Virus record (IMG/VR): IMGVR_UViG_3300047319_001872
Location: 1-64,000 of that record
Strand: one strand, 5' to 3'
DNA: 64,000 bases
The position numbers and the translations under genes are program-made. Position 1 is the stretch's first letter, and each line of letters begins with the position of its first letter. The notes under the pieces were generated by a model. It was not told where the DNA came from and made no database searches. It saw nothing but the letters and a program-made list of their open reading frames with translations. Below are positions 2,675-60,066 of this stretch, in pieces.

Positions 2675-2767
2675 GGTAATACTCCAAGAGATGAAAAGAG
2701 GGATGTAAAAACTGAGATTATTTAAACGGCACACTGGCCTGGGGTTGCCCCCAGGCCGCTATGTCGT

Positions 2768-3370
2768 CTAGCGACGGCTACGGCTTAGGCCAACCATGGC
2801 CATGCCAAGCAGCGCGCCTGCGAGGGTGCCCACAGCTTCTTCCGTGCTGTAGGTTTCGCGACGAGCCGGACGACCCACTGTCATCGTGACCGTCGGGCGA
2901 TGCGGCGCATAGGTTTCTTCTACGTGCACAGTCGTCGTCTTGGTACCGAAGGCCGTATGCTCATGATGCACTTCGGTGTGAGCGTGCGACATCGTCGGCT
3001 GCATCGAAGCAATCTTGTAGATCTTGATGGTCGTGGCACCGTAGATACCGTTCGGGTTCTTCTCGACGACTTCCAGCGTCAGCGGCAGATGCTCGATGCC
3101 TTCCACCATGAAAGACTTGATACGGCGACCGTAGAAGCTGCCTTCGTTGTACTCGACACCGACGATCGCGCCTTCGTAAAGACGCACGAGCTCGTTGCGA
3201 CGGTGCTCCTGCGACTCACGACGACCACCGAAGCGATCTTCGTTCGTGATGTACGTCACGTTCAGGGCTTGCGGACGCGCACGCAGTTCACGCAGCCGTC
3301 GTTCAGCCCGCTCCGCTGCTGTTTCGTTAGCGCGATACTCGTAGTCAGGCAGGTTGTTGATGCTCAGCAT
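2768..3370 (-). CDS. hypothetical protein with a C-terminal hydrophobic Gly/Ala tail
   Basis: ORF track; GGAG SD; C-terminus AVGTLAGALLGMAMVGLSRSRR. Confidence 0.8.
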   Translation of the reverse strand: MLSINNLPDYEYRANETAAERAERRLRELRARPQALNVTYITNEDRFGGRRESQEHRRNELVRLYEGAIVGVEYNEGSFYGRRIKSFMVEGIEHLPLTLEVVEKNPNGIYGATTIKIYKIASMQPTMSHAHTEVHHEHTAFGTKTTTVHVEETYAPHRPTVTMTVGRPARRETYSTEEAVGTLAGALLGMAMVGLSRSRR

Positions 3371-3436
3371 GGTAATTCTCCTTGTCAGGAATGAGGTACG
3401 CCAGGGGTCACCCCTGGCTGAATGTGTCGGGCGGGC

Positions 3437-3862
3437 TTAGAAGCCGAAGCGCGTACGCGGACGTTCTGCACGGCGCACCGAGATGCGCACTTCTTCGACA
3501 TTGCGACGCGGCATCGGGCGCGACACCCGTGCGGCGCTCAGCAGGGATTCGACGTCCGACTGGATGCGAACCACTGTCACGCTGTTTTCACCGAAGATCG
3601 AATCGCGTGCCGACGTATCGGTCGTGAGATTCAGCCCCAGACCGTCCAGGCCTTCGACGACCATCGTGGTGATCTTCTTGCCAAAGATCGTCGAGAGGAC
3701 TTCGGTCTTACCCAACACTGTACCTGCTTCCAGGACGATGTCTTCTTCCTGCGACCAGCTGCGGCTCACATGGCCAGTAACGGTATCTTCTTCCAGCGTA
3801 CGGCGCACCGTAGCGCGGATGACGTTAGAACGATGAGCGGCGTTGATGTGCAGAGCGAACAT
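3437..3862 (-). CDS. hypothetical protein (141 aa)
   Basis: ORF track; AAGGAAG SD; strong GC3 bias. Confidence 0.8.
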   Translation of the reverse strand: MFALHINAAHRSNVIRATVRRTLEEDTVTGHVSRSWSQEEDIVLEAGTVLGKTEVLSTIFGKKITTMVVEGLDGLGLNLTTDTSARDSIFGENSVTVVRIQSDVESLLSAARVSRPMPRRNVEEVRISVRRAERPRTRFGF

Positions 3863-3940
3863 GGCTTTTGCTTCCTTGTTTAAATGTAGGGGGTATTCAA
3901 AAACAGGGGAGCATCTTCTCTCCCCTGTCGGTACTACAGC

Positions 3941-4204
3941 TTACTCGGCTGCGAAGAGTGCATCGAGGGCGTCACTCGACCAGGCTTCAGTGTAGCCGAA
4001 GGAGGTCTCCTCTGCTAAGCCGAACTGCTCAGGCAGATTCAGCTCATGGCGCAGCGAGACTTCCTGAACCTCCTCGAACACTGACATTTCTTCGATGTCG
4101 TAGATGTCCAGGAGTTGCCTGCGCTTCGGCGTATGGTCCTTCGCTTCAGACTTGCGAAAGAGGTGGTCCGGACGAACGAAGCGAAAGGGCTTGTTTTGCG
4201 ACAT
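3941..4204 (-). CDS. hypothetical acidic protein (MSQNKPFRF...)
   Basis: GGAG SD before the ATG at 4204; the longer track start overlaps a promoter-like repeat. Confidence 0.65.
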   Translation of the reverse strand: MSQNKPFRFVRPDHLFRKSEAKDHTPKRRQLLDIYDIEEMSVFEEVQEVSLRHELNLPEQFGLAEETSFGYTEAWSSDALDALFAAE

Positions 4205-4277
4205 GGTTTCTCCAATTGCTTGAGAAGAGGTTGAACAACGAAAGTGGTTAGAACTTGTTACTTGCTCTAACTCAGCC

Positions 4278-4347
4278 GGAGAATATATGGTTGAAATCTT
4301 TTTCAATCCACGACTCTACGGCATAAAGGCCTGGGTTACCCCAGGCC
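4278..4347 (-). promoter_or_regulatory. hairpin/TATGCCG element followed by a promoter-like CCATATATTCTCC motif (copy 1)
   Basis: Hairpin GGCCTGGG-TTAC-CCCAGGCC at 4328-4347; about 50 bp nearly identical to 5006-5053. Confidence 0.55.
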
Positions 4348-4361
4348 CCTATATTACCCGA

Positions 4362-4697
4362 CTACCACCACTTCGCCAAACAGAATGCCGCGAAGCATTC
4401 CATCGAGTCGAAGAGCTCGGGCTCCTGGTGGTTGCCACTGCTGTCCTTCCAGAGCAACTCGCCCCAGATCGGAAAGCTGTGCAGTCGCCCCGGTGAGAGC
4501 TCATGCACGATCGTCGCATTGGCATTCACCTGTGCTTCGATCGTGTGCTCCGTGCGAAACTCCCACGTGAGCGTCTTCATGAACTGGGCCAGTGTCGAAC
4601 CCTTGTCCCGATCGTACGGGAGGCGCTCGAGATACTTCACGGCCGCGGGGTGATCGCGGGAGAAGTCTTCAGCACACTGGAAACGTTCTTCACTCAT
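4362..4697 (-). CDS. hypothetical protein (111 aa)
   Basis: ORF track; AAGGAG SD. Confidence 0.75.
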   Translation of the reverse strand: MSEERFQCAEDFSRDHPAAVKYLERLPYDRDKGSTLAQFMKTLTWEFRTEHTIEAQVNANATIVHELSPGRLHSFPIWGELLWKDSSGNHQEPELFDSMECFAAFCLAKWW

Positions 4698-4715
4698 GTC
4701 GTTCTCCTTGAACGG

Positions 4716-4946
4716 TTAATGGGTTTTCAAGCGACGATGGCTATCCATCAAGCCGCAATTGCACGGACCACCATGACCATGAATCGCCGACCAATCCGAC
4801 GACGCACAGTTAGTCCGTTTACGATTTCGTATCAGCCACTGCATGCCGTGAGGCGGTTGACGACAGCTACGGTCTCGCGTGAGATCCTGAGTTTCCTCAT
4901 GGATCTTCTTAAAGTTAGCCAGGATGGCTGTAAAACGTTCAGGCAT
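4716..4946 (-). CDS. possible small hypothetical protein
   Basis: ORF track only; fills the gap downstream of the promoter-like motif. Confidence 0.4.
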   Translation of the reverse strand: MPERFTAILANFKKIHEETQDLTRDRSCRQPPHGMQWLIRNRKRTNCASSDWSAIHGHGGPCNCGLMDSHRRLKTH

Positions 4947-5005
4947 AGGTCTCGGCGTGTAGTGACAGGAACGAGCTGCAAGTCTTTACTTGCTTGTGCT
5001 CGCCG

Positions 5006-5076
5006 GGAGAATATATGGTTGAATCTTTCTAGGATCACGACTCAGCGGCATAAGAGCCAGGCTACTGTGCCCGGCT
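5006..5076 (-). promoter_or_regulatory. hairpin/TATGCCG element followed by a promoter-like CCATATATTCTCC motif (copy 2)
   Basis: Imperfect direct repeat of 4278-4327. Confidence 0.55.
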
Positions 5077-5089
5077 CAGTCTGGTCTTG

Positions 5090-5640
5090 TAATTAAATAT
5101 TCTATTCTTACAGAGTATGACTCCAGGGAGTATTCCTTTCTAGGGAATAATAAAGAGAGGGGCTCCGCCCCTCTCTACGCTTAATTCTCTTCCTCCGCTT
5201 CGCTCCGCGTCGCCTCTGCTCCTTGACACATATCTAAGTTCCTACACAGTATTTTTTTACTTTATCCTTATAAATCAAGTACTTAGCTTCTAAACCCGAT
5301 ATTAACTTATCGGGGAAGGGGCTTGGTCCCCCTTCCCCTTTTTAAAAAGTTTAGACCGGGGTTTGTCAACCTAGAGAGTGAGCGCTGGCGCGCTAGGGAG
5401 AGGAAGCAAAGCACGAGCGCAGCGACAGAGATAGTTTTGGATAGGTATTGGATTGTATTGTTGATGAATGACACCGCATGGTCGAAAACCCGCCCAGCGT
5501 TGCAAACCCGTCTTAGGGGCGCGGCGGGCGGGTTTTTATCGTGTTCCCCTATCTTGTTATGCACCGCACGCAGCAGGATCTTTTATCCTGTAGATAGCAA
5601 TACTGTGAATCTCCAATTCCGTTCCTACTCCCTAAGGAAA
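5090..5640. other. AT-rich non-coding region at a divergent strand switch with several hairpins (candidate origin or ncRNA locus)
   Basis: Perfect stems at 5154-5176, 5295-5314, 5312-5338 and 5485-5536; no convincing ORF. Confidence 0.5.
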
Positions 5641-5646
5641 GAACCC

Positions 5647-6723
5647 ATGAGCAAGAGCATGTTCCGAATGGCGCTGGAAGGCGAGACGGTCGAGATGACC
5701 TCGCGTCCTAACGAGCCGACCATCGTGATGAGCGGTCCGTTGTCCGAGATCTTCACCAAGGCGCTGGATGTGGCCTACGCCAAAGAGCCGAGCCAAGGTG
5801 AGGGTGTAGTGGCCACGGAAAGCCAAGCCCAAGACGTGACGGTCATGCAAAAGATCGTCGAATCCATCAGCAACAACCAACAGCAGTCGGTCCAGCCGGT
5901 GAGCGAAGTCAACGGCGAAATCGGTGCCCCTGGTGCCGAAGGTGCTGACCTGCAAGTGTACGGTGTGGCGAAAGCTGACATCACCGACGCTGACGTGGTC
6001 GATGTGGCCGATGCGCTGATGAACGAAGACAGCGAAAGCCGCCCGAAGGAATTCGTGGTGGTGGTCGACGGCACTTTGCCCTCGGTCAACGGTCTGGGTG
6101 GCGCACCCAAGGAAGAAGTCGAATATCTGTCCGAAGCGATGGAAGCCCTGACCAAGCGGCTGGGTGGCAAGTTCTATCGTTCGTTCGAAGAATTCGTCGA
6201 AGGCGTGGTGAATCCGGAAACCGATCTCGGTAACGGTGGCAACGACGGCGCGGACGGTGTGGGTACGGCCGGTGATGTGACGGCCCAACAAGGTGGTGAA
6301 GGCGTCGCAGGTGACCCGGCAACCAATCCCTGCCCGCAAGATCCGTCGATCACCTCACGTGTGGTCGAGATCGCGAAGATCGCCGCTGAAGAAGCCGCTG
6401 CCGCTGCCGAAGCTCCGGCTGGTGAAGACAGCGGGGTGGCGCCTGCGCTGGAAGAAGGCAATACCGACACGGGTCAACCGGTCGTGCAACCGGTCTCGGC
6501 CTTGCCGAACGATCCGGGTGCTTTGAGCCCTGAAGCGCAAGCTGCCATCGGCGCGGGTGACGACAAGGTCCCCGCACCCAAGAAGGAGGGTGAAGTCCCG
6601 CAGAACCAGGCTAACGGCGAAGACCCGACGGTCCCCGTGGCCAATGGTGACGCTGCCCTCGAAAGCTTCCGTGTTCGTCTCGTTACGTTGGCGCCTCGCC
6701 AACGCGTGCGCGCACGTAAGTAA
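5647..6723 (+). CDS. acidic putative virion head/ejection protein
   Basis: AAGGA SD before the ATG at 5647; several A-x-E motifs (ALE, ATE, AME) typical of phiKZ-type prohead-protease substrates. Confidence 0.7.
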   Translation: MSKSMFRMALEGETVEMTSRPNEPTIVMSGPLSEIFTKALDVAYAKEPSQGEGVVATESQAQDVTVMQKIVESISNNQQQSVQPVSEVNGEIGAPGAEGADLQVYGVAKADITDADVVDVADALMNEDSESRPKEFVVVVDGTLPSVNGLGGAPKEEVEYLSEAMEALTKRLGGKFYRSFEEFVEGVVNPETDLGNGGNDGADGVGTAGDVTAQQGGEGVAGDPATNPCPQDPSITSRVVEIAKIAAEEAAAAAEAPAGEDSGVAPALEEGNTDTGQPVVQPVSALPNDPGALSPEAQAAIGAGDDKVPAPKKEGEVPQNQANGEDPTVPVANGDAALESFRVRLVTLAPRQRVRARK

Positions 6724-6751
6724 TCTCATCCCTGGAACGGATGGTGTAAAC

Positions 6752-6780
6752 GGCGGGGCTTCGGCCTCGCCTTTATGCCG
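6752..6780 (+). terminator. GC hairpin followed by TTTATGCCG
   Basis: GGCGGGGC-TTCG-GCCTCGCC then TTTATGCCG, directly after the gene stop. Confidence 0.65.
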
Positions 6781-6826
6781 TTGATCCTAATTCTGTGTAT
6801 CGTTGCCCTATCTGAGAGGATGCTAA

Positions 6827-8068
6827 ATGGTAGACGTTTCTATCAAGGGCGTGTTTGAGAGCGAGTGTGCCCACCTCGCGCTGGACGCGCAATTGGCCAA
6901 ACGCATCCATTTGTACACAGTCGGTTTCGCCCATAAAAACCAGGACCACATCGAGTTCTTTGGCGGGAACCTGACCGGTGTGCAAGTGGTGCGCTTTACT
7001 GACAGTGATAAAGACCGCTGGTTCACCGAGATTCTCCAAGCGGACGAAAGCACACTCGAAGCACGGCTGGTGGCGCTGCCCACGGTCAACAGTGACTGGG
7101 TGGTGTCCTCCGACACGCTCAATCTTTCCTGTGCCTGGCTCTTGCATGCGTTGCTCCACAGCAAGAAGCTAAGCGACGCTCAGCGTCATCAGGCGATGTT
7201 GGATGTCGTCCTGGTGATGCAGTACAAGTTCCTCACATCCCGTCTGTACCGGCACTTTAAGTACCCGGCGGATCGTGCGACGGCAGAAGCCACGTATGCA
7301 GCCCTGACGTTTAAGTATGCGATTAAACAGTACGGCTCTTGGGCCGCAGTGCTCAATGCCCGCGCCGAAGAAGTGATCAGCCCGACCGGTCTTCACCGCA
7401 AAGCCATCGAACTGATGGACCCCGATAGCACCGTCATTTATTTGCTCAATGATACGCAAGGCCGGATTCGTGACATGTTGAAAAACATTTACGATGTCTT
7501 CTTGCAAGTGCATCGGCAGGGTATCAAGATCAGCTCGACGAGTTCGCTAGTCGAACACGACGGGGTCGAGATCTTGAAGGACAAGTCGAAAAACCTCCTG
7601 GCTTACACCAGGTACATCAACTCGATCATCACCGACCGGAACTCCTTTATTCGCGAAGAGCTTCTCACTGTTATCGAGAAGCAGATGAAGACGATGCCGC
7701 CCCGTCTTTTCCGCGAATCGCTCGAATGGATGTCGGACAATTACCGCCAGTCCGGCGCGAGCATGATCGAAGAGCTGCTTAACGAAACCCTGATCCACAG
7801 TTTTGACTACCTCGCGGAGAATCGGAACTTGGTGAGGAATTCTACGGACTTGGCCAGCCTACTCACACGCTTGCGTGGTGTGTACATGAGTTCGCGGTCC
7901 ACGGACCCTGCTCTGTTCTCGCTGCGGGAGAAAGCAGAAAAGATCGTGAAGCTCGCGACTAACAATAAGAACTCCAGTGTGATTGCGGCTGTGCGCACCG
8001 GGATACTGCTGTACTTGATCGCCCGCGCGTATTCGATGCGGTATTACTCCCAGAGCGCCGCTGCATAA
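6827..8068 (+). CDS. conserved phiKZ-like virion structural protein
   Basis: 413-aa ORF; N-terminal HIEFFGGNL.GVQVVRFT segment recalled from phiKZ-like phages; lies upstream of terminase. Confidence 0.75.
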   Translation: MVDVSIKGVFESECAHLALDAQLAKRIHLYTVGFAHKNQDHIEFFGGNLTGVQVVRFTDSDKDRWFTEILQADESTLEARLVALPTVNSDWVVSSDTLNLSCAWLLHALLHSKKLSDAQRHQAMLDVVLVMQYKFLTSRLYRHFKYPADRATAEATYAALTFKYAIKQYGSWAAVLNARAEEVISPTGLHRKAIELMDPDSTVIYLLNDTQGRIRDMLKNIYDVFLQVHRQGIKISSTSSLVEHDGVEILKDKSKNLLAYTRYINSIITDRNSFIREELLTVIEKQMKTMPPRLFRESLEWMSDNYRQSGASMIEELLNETLIHSFDYLAENRNLVRNSTDLASLLTRLRGVYMSSRSTDPALFSLREKAEKIVKLATNNKNSSVIAAVRTGILLYLIARAYSMRYYSQSAAA

Positions 8069-8095
8069 GGCTTGGTCGCACGACCAGGTTCTACC

Positions 8096-8506
8096 ATGTC
8101 GCTTTTGAAGAGGTTAGCTACCCGAGGGTTCCTGTGGCTGGAGCACGTAAAGGGTAACAGGTCGTTCCAGCAAGAGATCGTGATCCAGACGAATCGCCGT
8201 AATACGCTTCGGGTGATTCATCATTCGGGTTACGACATCACCATCTACTGTCAGCGCTTGCAGTTCGAGACGGGCTACTCGCTCTGGCAATGGCCGAAGA
8301 AGAAACACCTGGCTTACCAGTTGTTTTCAACGACGACCAATGATGCACCGGAACTGATTCGTCGGGCATGTGACTTAGCGGTTACATTGCCTGCCCTGTG
8401 TCCCGGTTATGTAGAAGACGAAGTGCAAAAGCTCTACGCCATTGATGCGTACGTGGATTTGATCACGGACAAATTAAGAGCGCTCAAGCAAAGTAGCTTC
8501 ATCTAG
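8096..8506 (+). CDS. hypothetical protein (MSLLKRLATRG...)
   Basis: ORF track; ATG at 8096. Confidence 0.65.
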   Translation: MSLLKRLATRGFLWLEHVKGNRSFQQEIVIQTNRRNTLRVIHHSGYDITIYCQRLQFETGYSLWQWPKKKHLAYQLFSTTTNDAPELIRRACDLAVTLPALCPGYVEDEVQKLYAIDAYVDLITDKLRALKQSSFI

Positions 8507-8513
8507 CGCGTAT

Positions 8514-8542
8514 GGGGGAGGCTTCGGCCTCCCTCTATGCCG
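8514..8542 (+). terminator. GC hairpin followed by TATGCCG
   Basis: GGGGGAGGC-TTCG-GCCTCCCTC then TATGCCG. Confidence 0.65.
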
Positions 8543-8583
8543 CATCAGTATGATTACATTTACAGAAGACTCAGGGCAAGTAA

Positions 8584-9402
8584 ATGAACGAAACAATAGA
8601 CAATGTTGTAGACAGCTATGTTCCCCCGTTTACGGGCGAGCATCCCTACTACAAAGGGTATTACCAAGTCCCAGTTGGTCAAAGTCATGTGGTGATTAAC
8701 AAGCGTGGCGAGCTCATCAATCTCATTACAGGCGAGAAACACTTCACGCGGATTGCCGGGAGAGGGTACGTAATTACCACGCTCTGTGACGATGGGATTT
8801 GGAAAAACTACTTAGTCCATCGGCTGGTAGCTTTGCTGTTCGTGGATAAACCTGAACGACACAAAGAGATCAGCTTCGATGAATTGCAAGTGAACCATAT
8901 CGACGGTGACAAGCTGAACAACGTTTGGGATAACCTCGAGTGGGTCACTGGTGAAGAAAACATGAAGCATGCCCGAGAGCACGGGTTGTTTAGCAACCAG
9001 CTCAAGGTTTTGTCCAAAGACGTAGAGACTGGCGAAATGGAGAGCTACTACTCGGTAAGCGAGTGTGCTCGAAAAGCCGGTGTGACCCAGTCGGTCATGT
9101 TCATCCACCTCTGGTCTGTGGCAGCCGGTCGAATCAAACACCTAGGCCGGGTGTACAAGTTCGATGACGGAAAACCATGGCCTGAATTCCTTGCTCCGGA
9201 TGATAGCGAGGAGTACACGCTAGGCAGGGTCTGCGATATTGTCGGAGAGAATATCGAAACAGGTGAACGCACACTTTTTTGTTCAGTCAAACACGCTTGC
9301 CGATTGCTAAAGCTCGACATCGTCGGGTATCGCAATCATAAGGCACGAAAGGGAGCCGCTACCCCCTACAAGGGTTGGCTCTTTTCTCCATTAACCGAAT
9401 GA
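8584..9402 (+). CDS. HNH homing endonuclease (HNH_3 type with NUMOD1-like C-terminal repeats)
   Basis: VHRLVA...[11 protein letters not shown]...NLEWVT..EN motif; two S-V-x-x-A helix-turn-helix-like repeats; codon usage more AT-rich than neighbours. Confidence 0.9.
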
Positions 9403-9411
9403 GGTGACATT

Positions 9412-11679
9412 ATCATACTCTTCGAACAGGACTGGTATCGTTATCCGACCGCGATCATCGACACCAAGACCACCAACAAAAGTTGGATTCGTCTGGCAGC
9501 GGTGTATCGCTCGATGGGTATCAAGAACCACGCCTTCCTGCTCGCGCTGGTGAATCCGAAACTGCAAGGGGTGGACCCCTTCAGCAAGGACCTCACTCCT
9601 GAGCAGATGTACATGATCGCTGTCGAGTGCAAGATCAACCCCTGGTACTTCTTCCGGGAAATCGCACGGGCTCCGGGTAACTCCGGTTCCGATGCGGTGC
9701 CCTTGGAAGCCAACCGGGCGAACATTGCGCTCTACTGGTCCTTCTTTAACCACATCTTCTTTACGCTCATTCAGCCACGTCAGACCGGCAAGTCGTTCTC
9801 GACTGATACGCTGATGAGCTACCTGATGAACGTCGTCTGTACGGGTACCAGCATCAACCTGTTGACGAAGGACGATAACCTGCGCCGCAAGAATATCGAG
9901 CGGATCAAGGAAATCATGTCCGAGCTGCCACCGTACCTGAGCCAACGCTCGAAGGACGATGCGCAGAACGGTGAAGAAATCACCGTGAAGGCCTTGAAGA
10001 ATTCGTACAACACGCACGTGCCGCAATCGAGCCCGAAGCGTGCGTACAACATGGGTCGAGGTCTCACGACCGCGATCTTCCACATCGACGAGCCGCCGTT
10101 CCAGCCCAATATCGCGATTGCATTGCCTGCTGCTCTGGCTGCTACCGGCGCCGCTGTGGAACGGGCCAAGGCCGCGGGCGCGCCGTACGGGACGATCCTG
10201 ACGACGACCGCAGGCAAGAAGGACGACCGCGATGGTCGCTTCATCTACAAGCTGCTGGAAGACTCAGCTTCGTGGACTGAGAAGTTCTTCGACTGCCAGA
10301 ACTGGGCTGAACTCGATCGCATGGTCCGTCGTAATAGCCGCGCGGGTCTGTTCCGGATCAATGGCACCTTCAGTCACCGTCAGTTGGGTAAGAGCGATGA
10401 GTGGCTCAAGCAGAAGATTGAAGAATCGCTGCAGACCGGTGATGATGCGAACCGAGATTACTTTAACCTGTGGACCTCGGGTACGGAAAGCTCCCCGCTC
10501 TCCACCAGCACGGCTGAGATGATCGCTTCGTCGCGTCTGGACGAGCTCTACACTTCCATCAGTGATCCGGACGGCTACATCACGCGCTGGTACATTGCAC
10601 AGGAAGAGATTGAAGAGCGCATGGCGACCGGCAAATTCGTGCTTGGCATGGATACGTCTGAAGCAGGCGGGGGCGATGACATTTCCCTCGTCTTGATGGA
10701 TGTGGAAACCCTGGAGGTGGTCGCAGCGGGCTCGTATAACGAAACCAACCTGATTACCTTCTCCAAGTGGGTGTGCGATACGCTTGTCAGGTATTCGAAC
10801 ATCACAGCAGTCATCGAGCGGCGCTCCACTGGGGCGATGTTGCTGGACTACCTGCTCCTGATGTTGCCCAACTATGGCGAAGATCCGTTTAAACGCGTCT
10901 TTAACAAGGTGGTGCAGGATTACGACGAGTATCCGGATCGCTTCAAGGAAATCAAGGTGCCAATCGGTCGTCGTCCGACTGACATCTACGTGCGCTACAA
11001 GACCACGTTCGGCTTTGCCACCTCCGGTTCGGGGGCCAACAGTCGCAATGCCTTGTATGGTCAGGTGCTTCAAGCTGCGGCCCAGCGCAGCGGCATGAAG
11101 GTGCATGACAAGATGCTCGCCGGGCAGATCCTCGGTCTCGTGTACAAGAATGGTCGCATCGACCACGAAGATGGCGAACACGATGACTTGGTGATCGGCT
11201 GGTTGTTGTGTCACTGGTTCCTCATGCATGGCAAGAACCTGCAACACTATGGCATCGATCCCCGCCAGGTTATGTGTGCAGTCAAAACCAAGCAGACTGA
11301 GTCGCAAGAGGACTTCTTCCGGCGCATGGAGCAACAGACTGTGCGCAGTCGCATCGAGGAGATCTACAACGCACTCACCGGTGAGCACGATGACTTTGTG
11401 GCCGCGCGTCTGGAGCAGGAGCTGCGTATGCTGGATAAGAAGATCATCCTCGAACAGGATGAGATCTATTCGGTGGACGAACTCATCCGCAGTGCTCGGG
11501 AAACCAAGCGCAATAAGGTGAGGACCTCGAACCTGTACCAGCAAAGCCAGCAGAACCAGTACCTCGGTCACAATACGGGGATGCTGGTGACGAGCGAGTT
11601 ACCGATGACGCATGTGGACATGTTTGGTGCACCGGCTAACTACGGCGTGTATTCGACAGCCTCAGGCGCTCGTTGGTAA
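9412..11679 (+). CDS. terL: terminase large subunit (phiKZ gp25-like); the start codon appears non-canonical
   Basis: Walker A-like QPRQTGKS, Walker B FHIDE, RNase H-like nuclease LGMDTSE...HDDLVIGW; the frame is open from 9403 and encodes ILFEQDWYRYPTAIID upstream of the track's GTG at 9502. Confidence 0.92.
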   Translation: MILFEQDWYRYPTAIIDTKTTNKSWIRLAAVYRSMGIKNHAFLLALVNPKLQGVDPFSKDLTPEQMYMIAVECKINPWYFFREIARAPGNSGSDAVPLEANRANIALYWSFFNHIFFTLIQPRQTGKSFSTDTLMSYLMNVVCTGTSINLLTKDDNLRRKNIERIKEIMSELPPYLSQRSKDDAQNGEEITVKALKNSYNTHVPQSSPKRAYNMGRGLTTAIFHIDEPPFQPNIAIALPAALAATGAAVERAKAAGAPYGTILTTTAGKKDDRDGRFIYKLLEDSASWTEKFFDCQNWAELDRMVRRNSRAGLFRINGTFSHRQLGKSDEWLKQKIEESLQTGDDANRDYFNLWTSGTESSPLSTSTAEMIASSRLDELYTSISDPDGYITRWYIAQEEIEERMATGKFVLGMDTSEAGGGDDISLVLMDVETLEVVAAGSYNETNLITFSKWVCDTLVRYSNITAVIERRSTGAMLLDYLLLMLPNYGEDPFKRVFNKVVQDYDEYPDRFKEIKVPIGRRPTDIYVRYKTTFGFATSGSGANSRNALYGQVLQAAAQRSGMKVHDKMLAGQILGLVYKNGRIDHEDGEHDDLVIGWLLCHWFLMHGKNLQHYGIDPRQVMCAVKTKQTESQEDFFRRMEQQTVRSRIEEIYNALTGEHDDFVAARLEQELRMLDKKIILEQDEIYSVDELIRSARETKRNKVRTSNLYQQSQQNQYLGHNTGMLVTSELPMTHVDMFGAPANYGVYSTASGARW

Positions 11680-11695
11680 GCCGTTGGTAGAACGA

Positions 11696-11735
11696 CAGCA
11701 TAGAGCCCAGGGGTTTCCCCCTGGGCCTTATGACG
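11696..11735. terminator. bidirectional hairpin element at a convergent junction
   Basis: CAGCATA...CCCAGGGG-TTTC-CCCCTGGG...TATGACG. Confidence 0.7.
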
Positions 11736-11752
11736 CTGAGGACGCCAAAGCG

Positions 11753-16092: not shown

Positions 16093-16109
16093 AGCCTGCC
16101 TTGGAGAAG

Positions 16110-17027: not shown

Positions 17028-17178
17028 GTTTCATCCCAGAGTGGTTGGGGTCGCTTGGACCAAAGTGTCTATTCATAGTGAAAACTTACTGCCCATCCTA
17101 TGGCGATTTTTACTTGGGCGCTTTGCAGCTCGAAAGTACCCCTCTGTAGCAGCCCCGGCGAATTAAATTTTAAATACT

Positions 17179-17185
17179 TATGACT
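17179..17185 (+). promoter_or_regulatory. candidate late promoter (TATG) for the sheath-tube operon
   Basis: TATGACT after an AT-rich stretch, 130 nt upstream of the sheath ATG; TATG is the known phiKZ late promoter core. Confidence 0.4.
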
Positions 17186-17310
17186 GACATTTTCCTGCAG
17201 CTGGTGTTTTTGGCCAACTGATTTGGAGGGATACGGTCAGCCTCACCAGAGGACGCCAGGATGTTCAGCATCGTCTTCGAAACCATACCATTCAACTAAG
17301 GAATCGCGAA

Positions 17311-19449: not shown

Positions 19450-19515
19450 GCAATCCACGGGTGGGGGAGCTACGGCTCCCTCTCTAGCTGACATTCTTAA
19501 GAACAGGAGTTTTAC

Positions 19516-20436: not shown

Positions 20437-20461
20437 GACGAAACCAAAAAAAGAGTGATAG

Positions 20462-20520
20462 CGGCATAGAGCCAGAAAAGACCTTTGCGGGTCTTTTCTG
20501 GCTTTTATGTCGTTATGCCG
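20462..20520. terminator. bidirectional hairpin element at a convergent junction
   Basis: CGGCATA, AGCCAGAAAAGACC/GGTCTTTTCTGGCT stem, then TATGTCG and TATGCCG. Confidence 0.72.
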
Positions 20521-24762: not shown

Positions 24763-24777
24763 GTTAGTGATATATCG
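24763..24777 (-). promoter_or_regulatory. candidate early promoter CGATATATCACTAAC
   Basis: 14/15 identical to 46469-46483; resembles the phiKZ early consensus TATATTAC; upstream of a minus-strand gene. Confidence 0.55.
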
Positions 24778-24806
24778 TTGAGTTTTCTTTGAATCATGCG
24801 GTTTAG

Positions 24807-24835
24807 CGGCATAAACCCCAGGGTTTCCCCTGGGG
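24807..24835 (-). terminator. GC hairpin followed by TTTATGCCG on the minus strand
   Basis: CCCCAGGG-TTTC-CCCTGGGG with CGGCATA on the left; downstream of the protease stop. Confidence 0.65.
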
Positions 24836-40707: not shown

Positions 40708-40735
40708 GAGGGGAGCTTCGGCTCCCCTCTTTATT
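40708..40735 (+). terminator. GC hairpin followed by TTTATTTCG
   Basis: GAGGGGAGC-TTCG-GCTCCCCTC. Confidence 0.6.
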
Positions 40736-40749
40736 TCGTAGGAGCAGCC

Positions 40750-42865: not shown

Positions 42866-42903
42866 CGGCATAGAGGCCAGGGGAAACCCTGGCCCTTATG
42901 ACG
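42866..42903. terminator. bidirectional hairpin element at a convergent junction
   Basis: CGGCATA...GGCCAGGG-GAAA-CCCTGGCC...TATGACG. Confidence 0.72.
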
Positions 42904-44461: not shown

Positions 44462-44492
44462 GTTGGTCCTCGAAACAAAAAAAAAGAAGAAG

Positions 44493-44519
44493 GGGCATAG
44501 GGGAGGCCGAAGCCTCCCC
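44493..44519 (-). terminator. GC hairpin followed by TATGCCC and a T-rich run on the minus strand
   Basis: Minus strand GGGGAGGC-TTCG-GCCTCCCC-TATGCCC then CTTCTTCTTTTTTTTT. Confidence 0.7.
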
Positions 44520-46468: not shown

Positions 46469-46483
46469 GTTAGTAATATATCG
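46469..46483 (-). promoter_or_regulatory. candidate early promoter CGATATATTACTAAC
   Basis: Contains TATATTAC (phiKZ early consensus) on the minus strand; twin of 24763-24777. Confidence 0.6.
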
Positions 46484-46507
46484 CTGAAACCGTTTAGGAA
46501 TACGACC

Positions 46508-46954: not shown

Positions 46955-47034
46955 CGGAAACCCGCTCCAAACCGTGACTGTGCTCCGCACCCACCTCGAC
47001 CGCTCCAGAAGTGGGGTCGAGGGGTGCGGGGCGT

Positions 47035-47763
47035 TTATGCCGGTTCGGAAGGTCGAATTATGCTGAAGTATTCGACATCGATCAAGTTCAGGCCGACGAG
47101 CGACCTTCCCAGGATCTCTACAGCTTGCAGTGGATGGGCTGCGCGCTTAATGACTTGCTGCAACTCTTTGTCGCTTGGCTTATCCGCGAAGAATATCGCT
47201 GGCGCGAATATTGAGACATCTTGGATAGGCGTTGCTTGCTTCGATGTGGGTCCAAAATGCAGACTCATCCAAGGATCGTACTCGTACATCAACAGGCTCG
47301 AATACGACTGCTGTTTAACGTACAGAGGAGAAAGCTCTTGTGGGCGCATATGTACGAGCTCAACCGGTGCGAGCCCTGAAATCCAGGTCGCAATGACCTT
47401 GCCCAACTCAGCTTCTTCTTCGACGCTCAGCACGTAAGGGAACGTATTAATGACGACTTTTGCACTCTCGTGATACGGGCGTACAGTCGCCTGTTCCTTC
47501 AGATAACGCACTAGCGAATTCAGGAGGAACACCGCTTTAGTCGCACGTGAGAACTTTAACGTCTCTACGTCGCGCTTAGAGTACAGGTCACGGTAGACCT
47601 GCATATCCACGCCTGCGAACACGTCGCAGTCGCGTTTATGATAACTCTCGGACAACAATACAGCTTCGGCTACATGGTTGCCCATGCGTGCCAGGGTCCC
47701 GAGCCGTGTATCGAGCAGAGCATCGAGCTCCGCGTATACGACGGCAACCGCTGATTGATCCAT
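47035..47763 (-). CDS. conserved hypothetical protein (242 aa; N-terminal YAELDALLDTR resembles a HAD-like start)
   Basis: ORF track. Confidence 0.72.
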   Translation of the reverse strand: MDQSAVAVVYAELDALLDTRLGTLARMGNHVAEAVLLSESYHKRDCDVFAGVDMQVYRDLYSKRDVETLKFSRATKAVFLLNSLVRYLKEQATVRPYHESAKVVINTFPYVLSVEEEAELGKVIATWISGLAPVELVHMRPQELSPLYVKQQSYSSLLMYEYDPWMSLHFGPTSKQATPIQDVSIFAPAIFFADKPSDKELQQVIKRAAHPLQAVEILGRSLVGLNLIDVEYFSIIRPSEPA

Positions 47764-53689: not shown

Positions 53690-53745
53690 CGGCATAAACC
53701 CACTAACCCGCCCGTATTACTGGGGAGGTTAGTGGGAATATGACC
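53690..53745. terminator. bidirectional hairpin element at a convergent junction
   Basis: CGGCATA, CCCACTAACC/GGTTAGTGGG stem, then TATGACC. Confidence 0.65.
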
Positions 53746-53754
53746 GCGGTTGCA

Positions 53755-55865: not shown

Positions 55866-56315
55866 ACGCTGTAATCCTTTCTTTTCTATTCGTACCGAAT
55901 CAGAGTGTTTCGGGCTCGTCAGAGTATCCCTCGGGGGAATATATTGTTTCTTGCGTGTCCGAGACGCCCTCGCCTGATTCAGTAGGTAAGGTTGTCCATG
56001 GTGCAGGTCTAAGTAGTCCTGCTCGACCTCTTTCGTCACCTCGACTGGGAGGTTGATGTAGTAGAAATCAAAGGTTCGCTTACCTTCTTTAAACGCACGT
56101 TGCAAACCCTTGTTTTCGGCTACACCCCGTTTAAGCGCACGTAAGTGTTTAATCCGACCTCGGTACAAGTGCTTGGTTTGTCCGAAGAAGACTTCATCGG
56201 TCTGGGGAAAATGAATCGCATAAACGCCAGGTAAAGGAATGCGTTTGCGCAAATCCCCGTGGACATAAAGCGACAGATTGGTCTGAAGCCAATCTCGGAT
56301 CGTAGATGGTGTCAT
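55866..56315 (-). CDS. GIY-YIG endonuclease domain in frame with RNase HI (no intervening stop)
   Basis: GVYAIHF...FFGQT...R..HL..LK.G..EN..LQRAF...E motif; AT-richer codons; continuous ORF 54225..56510. Confidence 0.72.
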
Positions 56316-56847: not shown

Positions 56848-56851
56848 GAGT

Positions 56852-57313: not shown

Positions 57314-57424
57314 GATAGCCCCTATTGCTTCATTTTATGCTTAGTCTTATTCTAATGGATTTCAAGACACTTGGTCCATCCCCTGGTGTCCACGACCTGT
57401 TGAAGAACAGCTGGAGATTACTCG

Positions 57425-58732
57425 ATGTACACACTTAAAGGTTTTGCGAGCCACGCCCTGTTCGCAAACAACACGCCGGGTCAAGTCAACGCCGTCGGGG
57501 AACTCTCCACGGTGTCGCGGACTTACTCGCGCGAAATCGGCCTCTACACCGACGCAGCGGGTTCGCCGAACGTCACGCTCTGGTCGTTCTTGAGCGCAAC
57601 CGACGGGACAGCCCAAGTTGTCGATGCAGACCTCGCCAAGCGCGTGCTCACGATCTGCGCCTGGTTCTACAACCAGACCATTAACAATGCTGGCCAACAA
57701 TACGCGGACGTCTTGCTCGAAGGCGCCCTCATGCAGTTTGCTGCTACCGCTAACACCTTCGCCTCCGGGGCAATGGTCACCGACGGGACGCGCTGGTTGC
57801 CTGAATGGGTCAGCTGGACCGACGTGGCCAATCCCGGTTCGTTTATCCGCATCTGGTTTGCCGATGCGAGCTTCCAGAACGAATACGACGAATCGGCTTT
57901 CGTCATCGTCCCGCCGATCACGCCGCTCGACGACTTTTTCAAAGCCGCCACGCAAGTGCAAGCGGAAGTCAGCGCGGTCACCAAACCGCAGCTGTTCCTG
58001 AACATCCAGGCAGCCAAGGCGAACAATCCGGAAACCGACATCATCGTCATGTCTTACGACTGGCATGATCCGGCTGGTACCGGTACGCTCATCTCGACGG
58101 ACTGGACGCTGATTCTGTACGGCATGGCGGGTGACAATGTCGACTCGATCAGCGATGCACTGGAAGCCTACATTCTGGCGAACAGCGCGCATACGCGGGC
58201 CGAATGGGTCGCGGTGTTCCCGGACATCTTCAAGCGCACCGAGTTTGTACTGGTGCCGCGGTGGAACAAAATGGCGATCCCTGATCGCGCCACGGGTCAA
58301 GCGGGCATATACTCTCCGATTACGAATCTGACGGATGCGCTCGCGCTGCTCCCCCAGTTCGCTAGTTATCCAAGTGCTCATATCAATGCGCACGGCACGG
58401 TGATGGGGCATCCGTACAAGTCGCTGGCCATCGCCATGATTGGCTCGGACCAGAATCGCGATAACCTGTACGAGCTCTCGGACGTGTTCCCGGATCTCAT
58501 CTCGGTGAGCTCGACCTCGACGGACTTCGCGCGCATGAGCCAGGGCACGCAAGCCTTCTTGTCGGCCTTGGCCACGATGCTGCTGGTGGCGGAATCGATG
58601 ACGCAATATTCCAGCATTCCGCTGGGCTACACGAAGTTGATCCGTAACAACATTCTGTACCTCGTGTACAACTACCAGACGATCGACTACCTCGTCGCTG
58701 CCAAGTCGAACCCGCAGTTCGCCTCGTCGTAA
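57425..58732 (+). CDS. virion structural protein (phiKZ-like head protein family)
   Basis: GGAG SD; N-terminal GQVNAVGELST.S.TYSRE pattern recalled from phiKZ-like structural proteins. Confidence 0.72.
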   Translation: MYTLKGFASHALFANNTPGQVNAVGELSTVSRTYSREIGLYTDAAGSPNVTLWSFLSATDGTAQVVDADLAKRVLTICAWFYNQTINNAGQQYADVLLEGALMQFAATANTFASGAMVTDGTRWLPEWVSWTDVANPGSFIRIWFADASFQNEYDESAFVIVPPITPLDDFFKAATQVQAEVSAVTKPQLFLNIQAAKANNPETDIIVMSYDWHDPAGTGTLISTDWTLILYGMAGDNVDSISDALEAYILANSAHTRAEWVAVFPDIFKRTEFVLVPRWNKMAIPDRATGQAGIYSPITNLTDALALLPQFASYPSAHINAHGTVMGHPYKSLAIAMIGSDQNRDNLYELSDVFPDLISVSSTSTDFARMSQGTQAFLSALATMLLVAESMTQYSSIPLGYTKLIRNNILYLVYNYQTIDYLVAAKSNPQFASS

Positions 58733-58744
58733 TAGGAGCGCCGC

Positions 58745-60022
58745 ATGGCTGTTATCACTACCAACCTGATTCCGGAGCTGGGGGCGGCCGGAGTCTTTAC
58801 GCTCACCTCGCCATTTAACAACGCATTGATGGCGAATGCGTCGTACACCTGTATTTCGATCCGACTGCTTGAGGACATCATCGCGGCGGGTGGCGACCCT
58901 TACACCAAGTATTACCAGCCGCGCGAACAAACCTCGGGTGACCTGCAGGCCCAGTACCAGGCGGACCTCGGCAACGGGGTGTGCATCATCACGCTGCAGC
59001 AGTCGTCTGGCGCGGTCGCTTACGTGCCGTCGAGCTTTGTGGCCAGCTATCCCTCCAAGGGCGGTGTCCCCTACACCAACCTGATGATGGCGGTGGACCT
59101 GGGTGCGATGCCGAATTACGTGGACCTCACGTTCTTAAAGCAACAGATCGCCAATTTGGTGAAGACGACCGTGGGACTGACGAGCGTGTTGATTCAGACG
59201 GTGGTGGTGTCGCCGACGACCAATCTCTCGGCGTCCGACCATGCCCGTGCCGAAGCAGCCCGGCAGGCTAACATCACCAATACCAACACGCCCGAGTCGC
59301 AGGTGATTGCGCTCACTAAACAACTCCAGACGCTGCAAGGGCAGTACGCCAATCTGGAAGCATTTGTGAATGCTAACATCGGTAAGCTCACGGGTGGCAC
59401 GCAACCGACCGACCCGGTAGATCAGTTGGATGCGGCGTTGATTCCGCCAGGCATCACGCTGAGCAACACTAACCTGACGGCGACCAGCACAGTTACCGGC
59501 TGGCAATCAGCGCGTGGTACCGCTGGCCATCAAGCAGGCAAGTTCTACGCGGAAGCCACGATCAACACGCTGGCTGGGGCAGTCGGCTTTGGCATCTGTA
59601 ACGCCAGTCAGCTTAATAACAAGCAGCTTGGCACCGACACCAACGGCATGATGATCTTCACCGAGGCCGATGGTCAAACCGCGGGGATCTTCTACAACGG
59701 TGGCAACGCCCAGACGATCGGCACCACTCCGAAACAGGGTGACGTGGTAGGGATTGCGATTGACCTGAACGCGAAGCTCGGCTGGTTCTACAACCCGCAG
59801 ACGCAGCAGTGGAATGGTGACGTGATTGCCAACCAGAATCCGGCCACGGGTCTCGGGGGTCTGCCGCTGGCGGCGATTGCCGTACCGGGCGGTGCTGCGG
59901 GACTGGTCTACCTCGGCGTGTCACTGGATGCCAACACGGATGCAGTGACGATCAACGCAGGCGCGACCAACTTCGTGCACACAGCACCCACTGGCTTTAA
60001 CAAGTGGAATACCGCAGGCTGA
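58745..60022 (+). CDS. virion protein with a C-terminal SPRY/B30.2 (ConA-like) domain
   Basis: LSNTNLTAT...GKFYAE...GDVVGIAIDLNAKLGWFY SPRY motifs at about 59450-60019; coiled-coil linker. Confidence 0.75.
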   Translation: MAVITTNLIPELGAAGVFTLTSPFNNALMANASYTCISIRLLEDIIAAGGDPYTKYYQPREQTSGDLQAQYQADLGNGVCIITLQQSSGAVAYVPSSFVASYPSKGGVPYTNLMMAVDLGAMPNYVDLTFLKQQIANLVKTTVGLTSVLIQTVVVSPTTNLSASDHARAEAARQANITNTNTPESQVIALTKQLQTLQGQYANLEAFVNANIGKLTGGTQPTDPVDQLDAALIPPGITLSNTNLTATSTVTGWQSARGTAGHQAGKFYAEATINTLAGAVGFGICNASQLNNKQLGTDTNGMMIFTEADGQTAGIFYNGGNAQTIGTTPKQGDVVGIAIDLNAKLGWFYNPQTQQWNGDVIANQNPATGLGGLPLAAIAVPGGAAGLVYLGVSLDANTDAVTINAGATNFVHTAPTGFNKWNTAG

Positions 60023-60030
60023 AGCAACAA

Positions 60031-60066
60031 CGGCATAGAGGGAGGCTTCGGCCTCCCCTTATGTCC
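60031..60066. terminator. bidirectional hairpin element at a convergent junction
   Basis: CGGCATA...GGGAGGC-TTCG-GCCTCCC...TATGTCC. Confidence 0.72.

What the first reader, a model, noticed from the sequence alone, without database searches (positions are those of the whole stretch)
2727..60066. Family of GC hairpins followed by TATG(C/A/T)C(G/C) instead of a U-tract, oriented by transcription direction
Seen: twelve intergenic hairpins carry a conserved heptamer within a few nt of the stem. After rightward genes it lies on the right (TATGCCG 6774 and 8536). After leftward transcription it lies on the left as the complement (CGGCATA 4319, 5046, 24807; GGGCATA 44493). At all five hairpin-bearing convergent junctions it is present on both sides (11696/11729, 20462/20506, 42866/42897, 53690/53739, 60031/60060). 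One co-directional copy at 2727-2766 also has both flanks. Most copies lack a classical U-run. Known: TATG is the late-promoter core of the phiKZ non-virion RNAP. Inference: this is either a sequence-specific terminator or RNA-processing signal for the phage RNAP(s), or a promoter hard-wired to each terminator. The second option would give systematic antisense transcription at convergent junctions. I do not know of a description of this orientation rule.
Basis: partly seen in the sequence, partly recalled or inferred. Interest (0 to 1): 0.75.

Follow-up and report, generated by a model that had tools for sequence, protein, structure and literature searches.

The report
Jumbo-phage terminators with a TATG tail
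The hairpins followed by TATGCCG are this giant phage's transcription stop signals, a GC-rich version of a terminator motif already published for phiKZ and 201phi2-1, and in the relative 201phi2-1 the RNA ends map inside the heptamer.

Summary
All 17 heptamer coordinates check. Genome-wide (313 kb, phiKZ-like phage from a rhizosphere metagenome, nearest isolate Burkholderia phage FLC9), 96 intergenic TATGs lie 0-5 nt after a compact GC hairpin. That is 31% of intergenic TATGs, against 2-4% for control words. The logo is Y-TATG-H-C-G-Y-Y, and a U-run is almost always absent.

Orientation mostly follows transcription. 79 of 96 units follow a gene that reads into them, 1 lies at a divergent junction, and 14-15 of 18 convergent junctions carry the heptamer on both sides. 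Sixteen units are reversed.

The element is not new in kind. phiKZ has a published terminator consensus (hairpin + YTTATKYYGT, 61 mapped 3' ends), and 201phi2-1 has a similar motif. I placed the eight 3'-end coordinates printed for 201phi2-1 on its genome. Seven fall on position 6 of TATGNY|G and one on position 5.

The heptamer is therefore best read as the release tract that replaces the U-tract. A promoter wired to each terminator is not the main role: the motif and hairpins are strongest at convergent junctions. It cannot be excluded as a second function in tight co-directional arrays. TATG is about two-fold depleted inside genes on both strands.

The parts
2727..2766 (.). Hairpin 2736-2757. 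TATGTCG at 2760-2766 is on the + strand, reversed relative to the flanking minus-strand genes. The left flank 2727-2733 is a degenerate CGGCACA.
4319..4347 (-). Terminator unit. Stem-loop 4328-4347, heptamer TATGCCG on the minus strand at 4319-4325. Predicted RNA 3' end near 4320. An ATATAT-box candidate promoter lies about 30 nt further on.
5046..5078 (-). Terminator unit. Stem-loop 5055-5078, heptamer TATGCCG (minus) at 5046-5052. It lies in a gene-poor 949-nt stretch.
6752..6780 (+). Terminator unit after the + gene that ends at 6723. Stem-loop 6752-6771, TATGCCG at 6774-6780. Predicted 3' end near 6779. The FLC9 orthologue keeps TTTATGCCG while the stem shows compensatory changes.
8516..8542 (+). 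Terminator unit after the + gene that ends at 8506. Stem-loop 8516-8533, TATGCCG at 8536-8542. A second TATGATT lies at 8549.
11696..11735 (.). Bidirectional terminator at a convergent junction (terminase-like + gene and a virion-protein - gene). Stem-loop 11705-11726, TATGACG (+) at 11729-11735, TATGCTG (-) at 11696-11702.
20462..20520 (.). Bidirectional terminator at a convergent junction after the tail sheath and tube genes. 14-bp stem at 20470-20503, TATGCCG (-) at 20462-20468, TATGTCG (+) at 20506-20512, plus a tandem TATGCCG (+) at 20514-20520.
24807..24835 (-). Terminator unit. Stem-loop 24816-24835, TATGCCG (-) at 24807-24813. It is one-sided in FLC9 too. An ATATAT-box candidate promoter lies 31 nt downstream.
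40708..40738 (+). T-variant terminator after the 2101-aa + gene. Stem-loop 40708-40729, then TTTATTTCGT (TATTTCG at 40732-40738). This fits the phiKZ consensus TTATKYYGT with K=T. It is conserved in FLC9.
42866..42903 (.). Bidirectional terminator at a convergent junction. Stem-loop 42875-42894, TATGCCG (-) at 42866-42872, TATGACG (+) at 42897-42903.
44493..44519 (-). Terminator unit. Stem-loop 44500-44519, TATGCCC (-) at 44493-44499. A T-run, an SD sequence and the next start codon follow 38 nt on. FLC9 shows a G-C to C-G swap in the stem.
46982..47042 (+). Long hairpin 46982-47032 (-38 kcal/mol) followed by TATGCCG at 47036-47042, at the sixth convergent junction of the window. It is one-sided.
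53690..53745 (.). Bidirectional terminator at a convergent junction. Long stem-loop 53699-53736, TATGCCG (-) at 53690-53696, TATGACC (+) at 53739-53745.
60031..60066 (.). Bidirectional terminator at a convergent junction. Stem-loop 60040-60057, TATGCCG (-) at 60031-60037, TATGTCC (+) at 60060-60066.
1067..1086 (-). For contrast, one of the few classical hairpin + U-run terminators (stem-loop followed by TTTTTTTGG on the minus strand). Others are 5312-5338 (+) and 5154-5176 (-, tail TTATTATTCC).

Best explanation
The hairpin plus Y-TATG-H-C-G-Y unit is the standard factor-independent transcription terminator of this phiKZ-like jumbo phage. It is orthologous to the conserved terminator motif published for phiKZ and 201phi2-1.

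Proposed mechanism (inferred):
1. The GC hairpin forms in the nascent RNA.
2. The heptamer replaces the U-tract. U-A-U supplies the weak upstream end of the RNA:DNA hybrid.
3. The transcript is released at position 6 (a pyrimidine), just before the conserved G at position 7. That is 6-8 nt past the stem, the canonical distance.
4. This Y|G step is the same dinucleotide as in the elemental pause consensus of multisubunit polymerases (from my own knowledge).

A hairpin flanked on both sides is a bidirectional terminator. In that case CAUA can pair with UAUG and lengthen the stem.

Shown here: the association, the orientation, the conservation, and the position of published 3' ends in relatives. 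Inferred: that 3' ends fall at the same place in this phage, and the pause-and-release mechanism.
For: 1. Association of TATG with hairpins: 96 of 307 intergenic TATGs against 2-4% for control words, and 58 against 3.0 expected next to perfect hairpins.
2. Extended logo Y-TATG-H(C64/A25/T10)-C80-G68-Y82-Y82, found only in hairpin-linked copies.
3. Placement: 79 of 96 units follow a gene that reads into them, 1 lies at a divergent junction, and 14-15 of 18 convergent junctions are two-sided.
4. At convergent junctions the heptamer pattern match is higher (91% against 66%) and the hairpins are more stable.
5. Published phiKZ terminator consensus ...GGBYTTATKYYGT at 61 mapped terminators, and a similar motif A in 201phi2-1.
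6. The eight 201phi2-1 3'-end coordinates printed in PMC11512511 map to position 6 of TATGNY|G in 7 cases and to position 5 in 1. Six of the eight performed as well as or better than lambda T0 in the paper's in vivo assay (four outperformed it, two equalled it).
7. A published phiKZ small-RNA 3' end (270485) also maps to position 6 after hairpin + TTAT.
8. At FLC9 orthologous junctions the stems change by compensatory pairs or are replaced, while CATA/TATG stays.
9. The same enrichment occurs in FLC9, RP12, RSL2, phiKZ and Erwinia phage RAY.
10. The phage encodes phiKZ-type split RNA polymerase subunits.
11. At least five units are followed by a separate ATATAT-box promoter candidate.
Against: - No RNA data exist for this phage. 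The two RNA runs found hold only low-coverage contigs of a 90-95% relative. 3' ends here are therefore inferred by homology.
- ONT 3' ends are good to about 2 nt and could reflect trimming or processing.
- 16 of 96 units point against the gene flow. About six of them are solitary.
- The GCCG part of the hybrid is strong, which does not fit the classical weak-hybrid model.
- TATG alone is two-fold avoided in genes on both strands. This points to an activity of TATG beyond termination.
- 11 units leave no space for another promoter before the next gene.
Confidence: 0.75

Rival explanations
1. Dual module. The hairpin terminates, and the adjoining TATG is also a working nvRNAP start site (+1 at G4). 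Each co-directional terminator would restart transcription for the next gene. Convergent copies would give antisense RNA, or would be silenced by context.
For: - TATG with +1 at G is necessary for phiKZ nvRNAP initiation, and no upstream sequence is required.
- 8 of the 14 phiKZ gp123 residues that contact TATG are identical in this phage's orthologue, at 30% overall identity.
- TATG is strongly avoided in genes, slightly more so on the antisense strand by the Markov estimate.
- 11 of 47 co-directional units lie 22-31 nt before the next start codon. 24 of 47 have no other TATG or ATATAT box before the gene.
Against: - 32 units lie at convergent junctions and only 1 at a divergent junction.
- The CCG extension is best kept where no promoter is wanted.
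- Hairpin-less intergenic TATGs, including those at divergent junctions before structural genes, lack the extension.
- phiKZ P119L has no hairpin.
- The mapped 3' end lies 2 nt downstream of the would-be start.
Confidence: 0.25
2. Promoter-core mimic pause. The elongating nvRNAP captures the non-template TATG in the same beta-lobe pocket that reads it at promoters. It pauses there, and this pause gives the hairpin time to act.
For: - The pocket binds single-stranded non-template TATG at -3 to +1.
- The pocket residues are partly conserved here.
- TATG is also avoided on the sense strand of genes.
- TAT is kept from 37% to 57% GC genomes instead of a plain T-run.
Against: - Register. With TATG in the pocket, the RNA 3' end would be at U3/G4, only 3-5 nt from the stem. 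The 3' arm of the hairpin would still be inside the hybrid. Published 3' ends are at position 6.
- The pocket is described as incomplete in the transcribing complex.
- Terminators after early genes, read by the virion polymerase, carry the same motif.
- The 201phi2-1 units also terminate in a host-polymerase reporter assay.
Confidence: 0.12
3. RNA-level signal. The single-stranded UAUGNY tail after the hairpin is a processing site or a tag. It could be read by a nuclease or by a phage RNA-binding protein, for 3'-end protection or for export of mRNA from the phage nucleus.
For: - The same 8-9 nt are conserved across distant phiKZ-like phages regardless of GC content.
- In two-sided units position 5 is kept mismatched, so the last nucleotides stay unpaired.
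- ONT 3' ends cannot tell termination from cleavage.
Against: - G7 and Y8-Y9 lie beyond the mapped 3' end, yet they are conserved. This fits a DNA or polymerase signal better than a tag on the released RNA.
- The units work as terminators in reporter constructs without phage proteins.
Confidence: 0.1
4. DNA-level repeat. The unit is a REP/BIME-like mobile palindrome or a protein-binding inverted repeat, unrelated to transcription.
For: It is an intergenic palindrome with a conserved flanking word in about 60-70 copies. Some stems recur, for example GGGAGGC-TTCG-GCCTCCC and GCCCTCCCCG-TAA-CGGGGAGGGC.
Against: - Stem sequences and lengths are heterogeneous.
- The spacing between the two heptamers varies from 24 to 52 nt.
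- One-sided units follow gene direction.
- Orthologous positions are kept between phages, with compensatory stem evolution.
Confidence: 0.03

Closest known systems
Conserved intrinsic terminator motif of phiKZ (Putzeys et al. 2024, PMC10914365) and motif A/B of 201phi2-1 (PMC11512511)
   Same: - A GC stem-loop followed directly by (Y)TTAT-K-Y-Y-G-T.
- Found after genes and, as bidirectional copies, between convergent genes.
- The phages have two split multisubunit RNA polymerases.
- The left CATA flank lengthens the stem (motif B in 201phi2-1).
- Published 3' ends map to position 6 of the heptamer.
   Different: - Here the genome is 57% GC and the T-rich context is gone. What remains is Y-TATG-H-C-G-Y, with G almost fixed at the K position (91%) and C at position 6.
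- No transcript ends have been measured for this phage.
Canonical bacterial intrinsic terminator (hairpin + U-tract)
   Same: - A GC hairpin.
- Release 7-9 nt after the stem.
- Works in either direction when flanked on both sides.
- The 201phi2-1 units stop the host polymerase in vivo.
   Different: There is no U-tract. On average 2.9 T occur in the 8 nt after the stem, and TTTT occurs in only 3 of 96 units. A specific word with an invariant A and a strong GCCG segment stands in its place.
phiKZ nvRNAP late promoter (TATG, +1 at G; Yakunina 2015; IUCrJ 2026 structure)
   Same: - The same tetranucleotide.
- The polymerase orthologue that reads it is present and its pocket is partly conserved.
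- TATG is avoided inside genes.
   Different: - Promoter copies need no hairpin (phiKZ P119L) and show no CCG extension.
- Hairpin-linked copies concentrate at gene ends and convergent junctions.
Class II (sequence-specific) terminators of T7 RNA polymerase. A 2026 preprint reports that some of them act as promoters in another context (10.64898/2026.02.12.705533; abstract seen)
   Same: A phage polymerase stopping at a specific short word rather than at a plain U-run. There is precedent for one sequence having both terminator and promoter activity.
   Different: - T7 class II signals work without a hairpin and use a different word (ATCTGTT, from my own knowledge).
- T7 has a single-subunit polymerase.

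Membership tests
phiKZ-type conserved intrinsic terminator | GC-rich stem-loop, mostly with a tetraloop | tested here: met
   All 13 window units fold, with dG -17 to -38 kcal/mol and z -2.8 to -9.4. 96 units genome-wide.
phiKZ-type conserved intrinsic terminator | 3' flank matching YTTATKYYGT immediately after the stem | tested here: met
   The logo is Y-T-A-T-G-H-C-G-Y-Y, 0-2 nt after the stem in 81 of 96 units. A T-variant TTTATTTCGT lies at 40730-40739. Consensus.
phiKZ-type conserved intrinsic terminator | Lies downstream of genes in the direction of transcription, and is bidirectional between convergent genes | tested here: met
   79 of 96 units follow a gene that reads into them. 14-15 of 18 convergent junctions are two-sided. 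16 units are reversed.
phiKZ-type conserved intrinsic terminator | Transcript 3' ends map at the motif | not testable with these tools
   No usable RNA run exists for this phage. In relatives, 8 of 8 published 201phi2-1 ends and 1 phiKZ end map to positions 5-6.
phiKZ-type conserved intrinsic terminator | The host genome is a phiKZ-like phage with split multisubunit RNA polymerases | tested here: met
   PHROG RNA polymerase beta families, E=0 and 3e-201. tblastn finds 314 phiKZ-like records. gp123 orthologue, E=2e-76.
Canonical intrinsic terminator | U-tract (at least 5 T in 8) directly after the stem | tested here: not met
   5 of 96 units reach 5 T. Mean 2.9. TTTT within 10 nt in 3 of 96. 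No enrichment of hairpin + T-run sites.
phiKZ nvRNAP late promoter | TATG core with the start at G | tested here: inconclusive
   The word is present by definition. No 5'-end data. The pocket is 8/14 identical.
phiKZ nvRNAP late promoter | Stands upstream of the genes it drives, including at divergent junctions, and is not expected between convergent genes | tested here: not met
   1 of 96 units at divergent junctions and 32 of 96 at convergent junctions. The motif is strongest at convergent junctions.
REP/BIME-like mobile palindromes | A conserved palindrome sequence family linked to a dedicated transposase | tested here: not met
   Stems are heterogeneous in sequence and length. Orthologous sites evolve by compensatory change. 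I did not search for a transposase.
N4-type hairpin promoters | A short hairpin upstream of early genes, used for initiation by the virion polymerase | tested here: not met
   The units lie at gene ends and convergent junctions. The candidate early promoters are a separate ATATAT-box motif.

The most novel reading that the evidence does not exclude
In phiKZ-like phages one four-letter word, TATG, is read by the phage polymerase at both ends of a transcript. Naked, it marks the start. Placed right after a hairpin and extended to TATG-H-C-G, it marks the stop. Such a copy may also restart transcription for the next gene. Terminators and promoters would then be two contexts of one polymerase-DNA contact. 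This would explain why TATG is purged from coding sequence.
Probability: 0.2. Interest if true: 0.7.

Novelty: new member of a known kind. Interest (0 to 1): 0.4.

Why it matters
Annotation. The motif gives a simple, strand-aware rule for marking transcription-unit ends in uncultured GC-rich jumbo phages, where classical terminator finders see nothing.

Specificity of the tail. The GC-rich relatives show that the conserved tail of phiKZ terminators is a specific word (TATG-H-C-G), not merely a poor U-tract.

Position of the RNA end. Published 3' ends sit at a fixed Y|G step inside that word.

An open question made testable. The same tetranucleotide is the start-site core of the non-virion polymerase and is two-fold avoided inside genes. 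Existing phiKZ and 201phi2-1 data sets and purified polymerase can now test how these non-canonical polymerases stop, and whether stopping and starting share a contact.

Tried and rejected
RNA evidence for this phage.
- The window is held only by rhizosphere and soil DNA metagenomes.
- The two RNA runs found hold a few short contigs of a 90-95% relative, with no end information.

Literature access.
- Supplementary TSS/TTS tables of the phiKZ and 201phi2-1 papers are not held.
- Ceyssens 2014 is not held.
- One literature query was malformed.

Methods that failed or were replaced.
- My first hairpin scan let stems extend through the flanks and so missed the two-sided units. I replaced it with a scan that keeps the hairpin upstream of TATG.
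- An uncorrected energy threshold gave many false hairpins, so I added an energy-per-length filter checked against control words.

Other negative results.
- Rfam and tRNA scans of the window found nothing.
- The heptamer as a bare word is not enriched in the window. 'More heptamers than chance' is therefore the wrong test; placement is the signal.

Readings considered and rejected.
- The flanks as mere stem extension. One-sided units exist, and position 5 is kept mismatched in two-sided ones.
- A REP-like repeat and a protein-binding inverted repeat. Stems are heterogeneous and the spacing varies.

Full report
WHAT THE WINDOW IS. The window is the first 64 kb of a 313,315-bp virus record with terminal repeats. 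It is 56.6% GC and is held by rhizosphere and soil metagenomes. It encodes phiKZ-type split RNA polymerase beta subunits, a tail sheath and a terminase. The nearest isolate is Burkholderia phage FLC9, with 85% amino-acid identity on one polymerase subunit. Next come Ralstonia phages RP12/RP31 (53%) and RSL2/RSF1 (46%), then several hundred phiKZ-like phages. My own rough gene caller gives about 350 genes, 310 of them on the minus strand.

THE OBSERVATION. There are two small deviations. The left flank at 2727 is CGGCACA. The copy at 11696 is CAGCATA, which reads TATGCTG on the minus strand.

The heptamer as a word is not more frequent than chance in the window: 33 matches against 30.4 +/- 5.5 in shuffles. 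The signal is its placement. 18 of the 33 abut a strong intergenic hairpin.

Genome-wide figures:
- 96 of 307 intergenic TATGs follow a compact hairpin within 0-5 nt, against 1.7-4.3% for five control tetramers. Only 1 of 484 genic TATGs does so.
- Next to perfect-stem hairpins, TATG occurs 58 times against 3.0 expected, while control words are at expectation.
- The hairpin-linked copies share an extended logo, Y-TATG-H(C 64, A 25, T 10, G 1%)-C 80-G 68-Y 82-Y 82. Hairpin-less intergenic TATGs show no extension.
- A U-run is absent. The 8 nt after the stem hold 2.9 T on average, and TTTT occurs within 10 nt in 3 of 96 units.
- Classical hairpin + T-run sites are not enriched in window 1-20000 (18 against 16.3 +/- 3.7).

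ORIENTATION. Of the 96 units:
- 47 follow a gene that reads into them and precede a co-directional gene;
- 32 stand at convergent junctions;
- 16 point against the local gene flow;
- 1 stands at a divergent junction.

Of 18 convergent junctions, 14 are scored two-sided. A 15th (60022|60075) is two-sided by eye. Three are one-sided. Among one-sided hairpins in co-directional arrays, 16 have the heptamer on the downstream side and 6 on the upstream side. I found no missed plus-strand gene that would explain those six.

IT IS A KNOWN KIND OF ELEMENT. Putzeys et al. 2024 mapped transcript ends in phiKZ by ONT-cappable-seq. They reported a conserved motif at 61 intrinsic terminators, BCCYCCCCHWWDGGGRRGGBYTTATKYYGT: a stem-loop followed by a TTAT region. 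The 201phi2-1 study found a very similar motif A (n=59). It also found a motif B that lengthens the stem, and 15 bidirectional terminators. Read against the present logo, TAT-K-Y-Y-G-T is TAT-G-H-C-G-Y.

I confirmed the arrangement directly in the sequences. In 100 kb of phiKZ, TATG lies within 8 nt of hairpins 40 times against 4.0 expected. The figures are 22 against 1.2 in FLC9, 17 against 1.2 in RP12 and 6 against 0.7 in RSL2. Erwinia phage RAY also has it. Vibrio phage pVa-21 uses T-runs instead. phiKZ shows the same CATA-hairpin-TTATG layout after its major capsid gene.

WHERE THE RNA ENDS. The 201phi2-1 paper prints eight 3'-end coordinates of terminators that were also tested in vivo. 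On NC_010821.1, seven of them fall on position 6 of the heptamer, a pyrimidine just before G7. Examples are TATGa[C]g, TATGt[T]g, TATGc[T]g, TATGc[C]g and a TATAC[C]G variant. One falls on position 5. A phiKZ small RNA with published bounds ends at position 6 of hairpin-TTATAT[T], and it starts next to a hairpin-less TATG. The heptamer therefore spans the release site, 6-8 nt after the stem. The coordinates come from the papers; the mapping is mine. ONT ends are good to about 2 nt.

SELECTION ON THE HEPTAMER, NOT ON THE STEM SEQUENCE. I aligned ten junctions with FLC9, and nine of them carry a unit. At those nine the stems differ by compensatory pair changes (for example G-C to C-G at 44509 and three double changes at 11715) or are replaced outright (20486). 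Every CATA/TATG core is kept, and positions 5-7 vary only within the allowed set.

TERMINATOR OR PROMOTER. Evidence for termination as the selected role:
- The near absence of units from divergent junctions and their presence on both sides of convergent ones.
- A better pattern match at convergent junctions (91% against 66%, Fisher P=0.015) and stronger hairpins there (median -21.9 against -18.6 kcal/mol, P=3e-4).
- Tandem heptamers at convergent junctions.
- A separate ATATAT-box promoter candidate 20-32 nt after at least five units.
- No hairpin at phiKZ P119L.
- TATGs at divergent junctions before structural genes lack the CCG extension.

Evidence that keeps a promoter role alive as a second function:
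- TATG is the start-site core of the phiKZ non-virion polymerase.
- 8 of the 14 gp123 residues that contact TATG are identical in this phage's orthologue, at 30% overall identity.
- TATG is about two-fold depleted in genes on both strands. On the sense strand there are 358 copies against 687 +/- 20 under synonymous-codon shuffling (z = -16). On the antisense strand there are 153 against 281 +/- 12 (z = -11). This is far beyond words of the same composition.
- 11 of 47 co-directional units lie 22-31 nt from the next start codon, with no room for another promoter.

MECHANISM (INFERENCE). The hairpin forms, and U-A-U gives a weak upstream hybrid end. The polymerase stops at the Y6|G7 step. This is the dinucleotide of the elemental pause consensus G-10/Y-1/G+1 known for bacterial polymerase (from my own knowledge), at the canonical 7-9 nt from the stem.

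In two-sided units CAUA pairs with UAUG and lengthens the stem. The 201phi2-1 authors found such elongated stems to be the stronger terminators.

The idea that the polymerase's TATG pocket causes the pause fits the shared word. It fits poorly in register, because the 3' end would lie only 3-5 nt from the stem. The pocket is also described as incomplete in the transcribing complex.

UNEXPLAINED.
- In 23 two-sided units the two heptamers share the base at position 5 only 3 times, against 48% expected (P=5e-4). The flank helix is therefore kept mismatched next to the release site.
- Solitary reversed units occur here and in FLC9.
- T-runs lie 1-18 nt after the heptamer in 14 units.

VERDICT. The element is a new member, in a GC-rich uncultured phage, of a terminator family already described for phiKZ and 201phi2-1. 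The points added here are the fixed position of published 3' ends inside the heptamer, the persistence of TATG-H-C-G where T-richness is lost, and the genome-wide avoidance of TATG.

Noticed in passing
window 4282-4296, 5010-5024, 24769-24783, 46475-46489 and 55938-55952. Genome: 12 sites in all.: A second intergenic motif: ...TTCAA(A)G...C-R-R-C-N-ATATAT-Y-A/C-C-T. All 19 strand hits of NATATATH in the genome are intergenic. Most point at a gene start 54-127 nt away and lie 20-32 nt after a terminator heptamer. It resembles the AT-rich early (virion-polymerase) promoter box of phiKZ (TATATTAC).
   Followed up: partly
whole genome (G000), all called genes: TATG is the most depleted non-stop tetranucleotide inside genes on both strands. 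Ratios are 0.52 and 0.55 against synonymous-codon shuffles (z -16 and -11). One third of all TATGs lie in the 13% of the genome that is intergenic.
   Followed up: yes
23 two-sided hairpins, for example window 11696/11729, 20462/20506, 42866/42897 and 53690/53739: The two heptamers of one hairpin almost never carry the same base at position 5 (3 of 23, expected 48%, P=5e-4). The CAUA/UAUG flank helix therefore always has a mismatch next to the predicted RNA 3' end.
   Followed up: partly
window 4698-5646: A 949-nt stretch with no convincing gene. It holds two opposed classical U-tract hairpins (5154-5176 minus, 5312-5338 plus) and one heptamer unit (5046-5078). The layout and both hairpins recur in FLC9 at 13.75-14.47 kb. 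It may hold small RNA genes.
   Followed up: no
window 44470-44492. Also genome 80730, 106750, 115410, 134060, 141350, 259005 and 274270.: T-runs of 6-12 nt lie a few nucleotides after the heptamer (14 of 96 units), between the terminator and the next ribosome-binding site. This is too far from the stem to be a classical U-tract.
   Followed up: no
genome 87598-87619, 144463-144484, 154650-154671, 164757-164774 and 228989-229009. FLC9 (L008) 27492-27515.: Solitary reversed units. The heptamer lies only upstream of the hairpin relative to the flanking genes, as if to stop antisense or read-through transcription coming the other way. The copy at 87598 also has a U-run on the sense side.
   Followed up: partly
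G000 89809-91446 (minus strand): Orthologue of phiKZ gp123, the polymerase subunit whose beta-lobe pocket binds TATG. It is 30% identical overall, with 8 of 14 pocket residues identical and 2 conservative changes.
   Followed up: partly
window 16000-21900 in RNA runs X24 (root metatranscriptome) and X25: Short contigs 90-95% identical to the tail sheath and tube genes. A related phage is therefore present in RNA libraries from plant roots, at very low depth.
   Followed up: no
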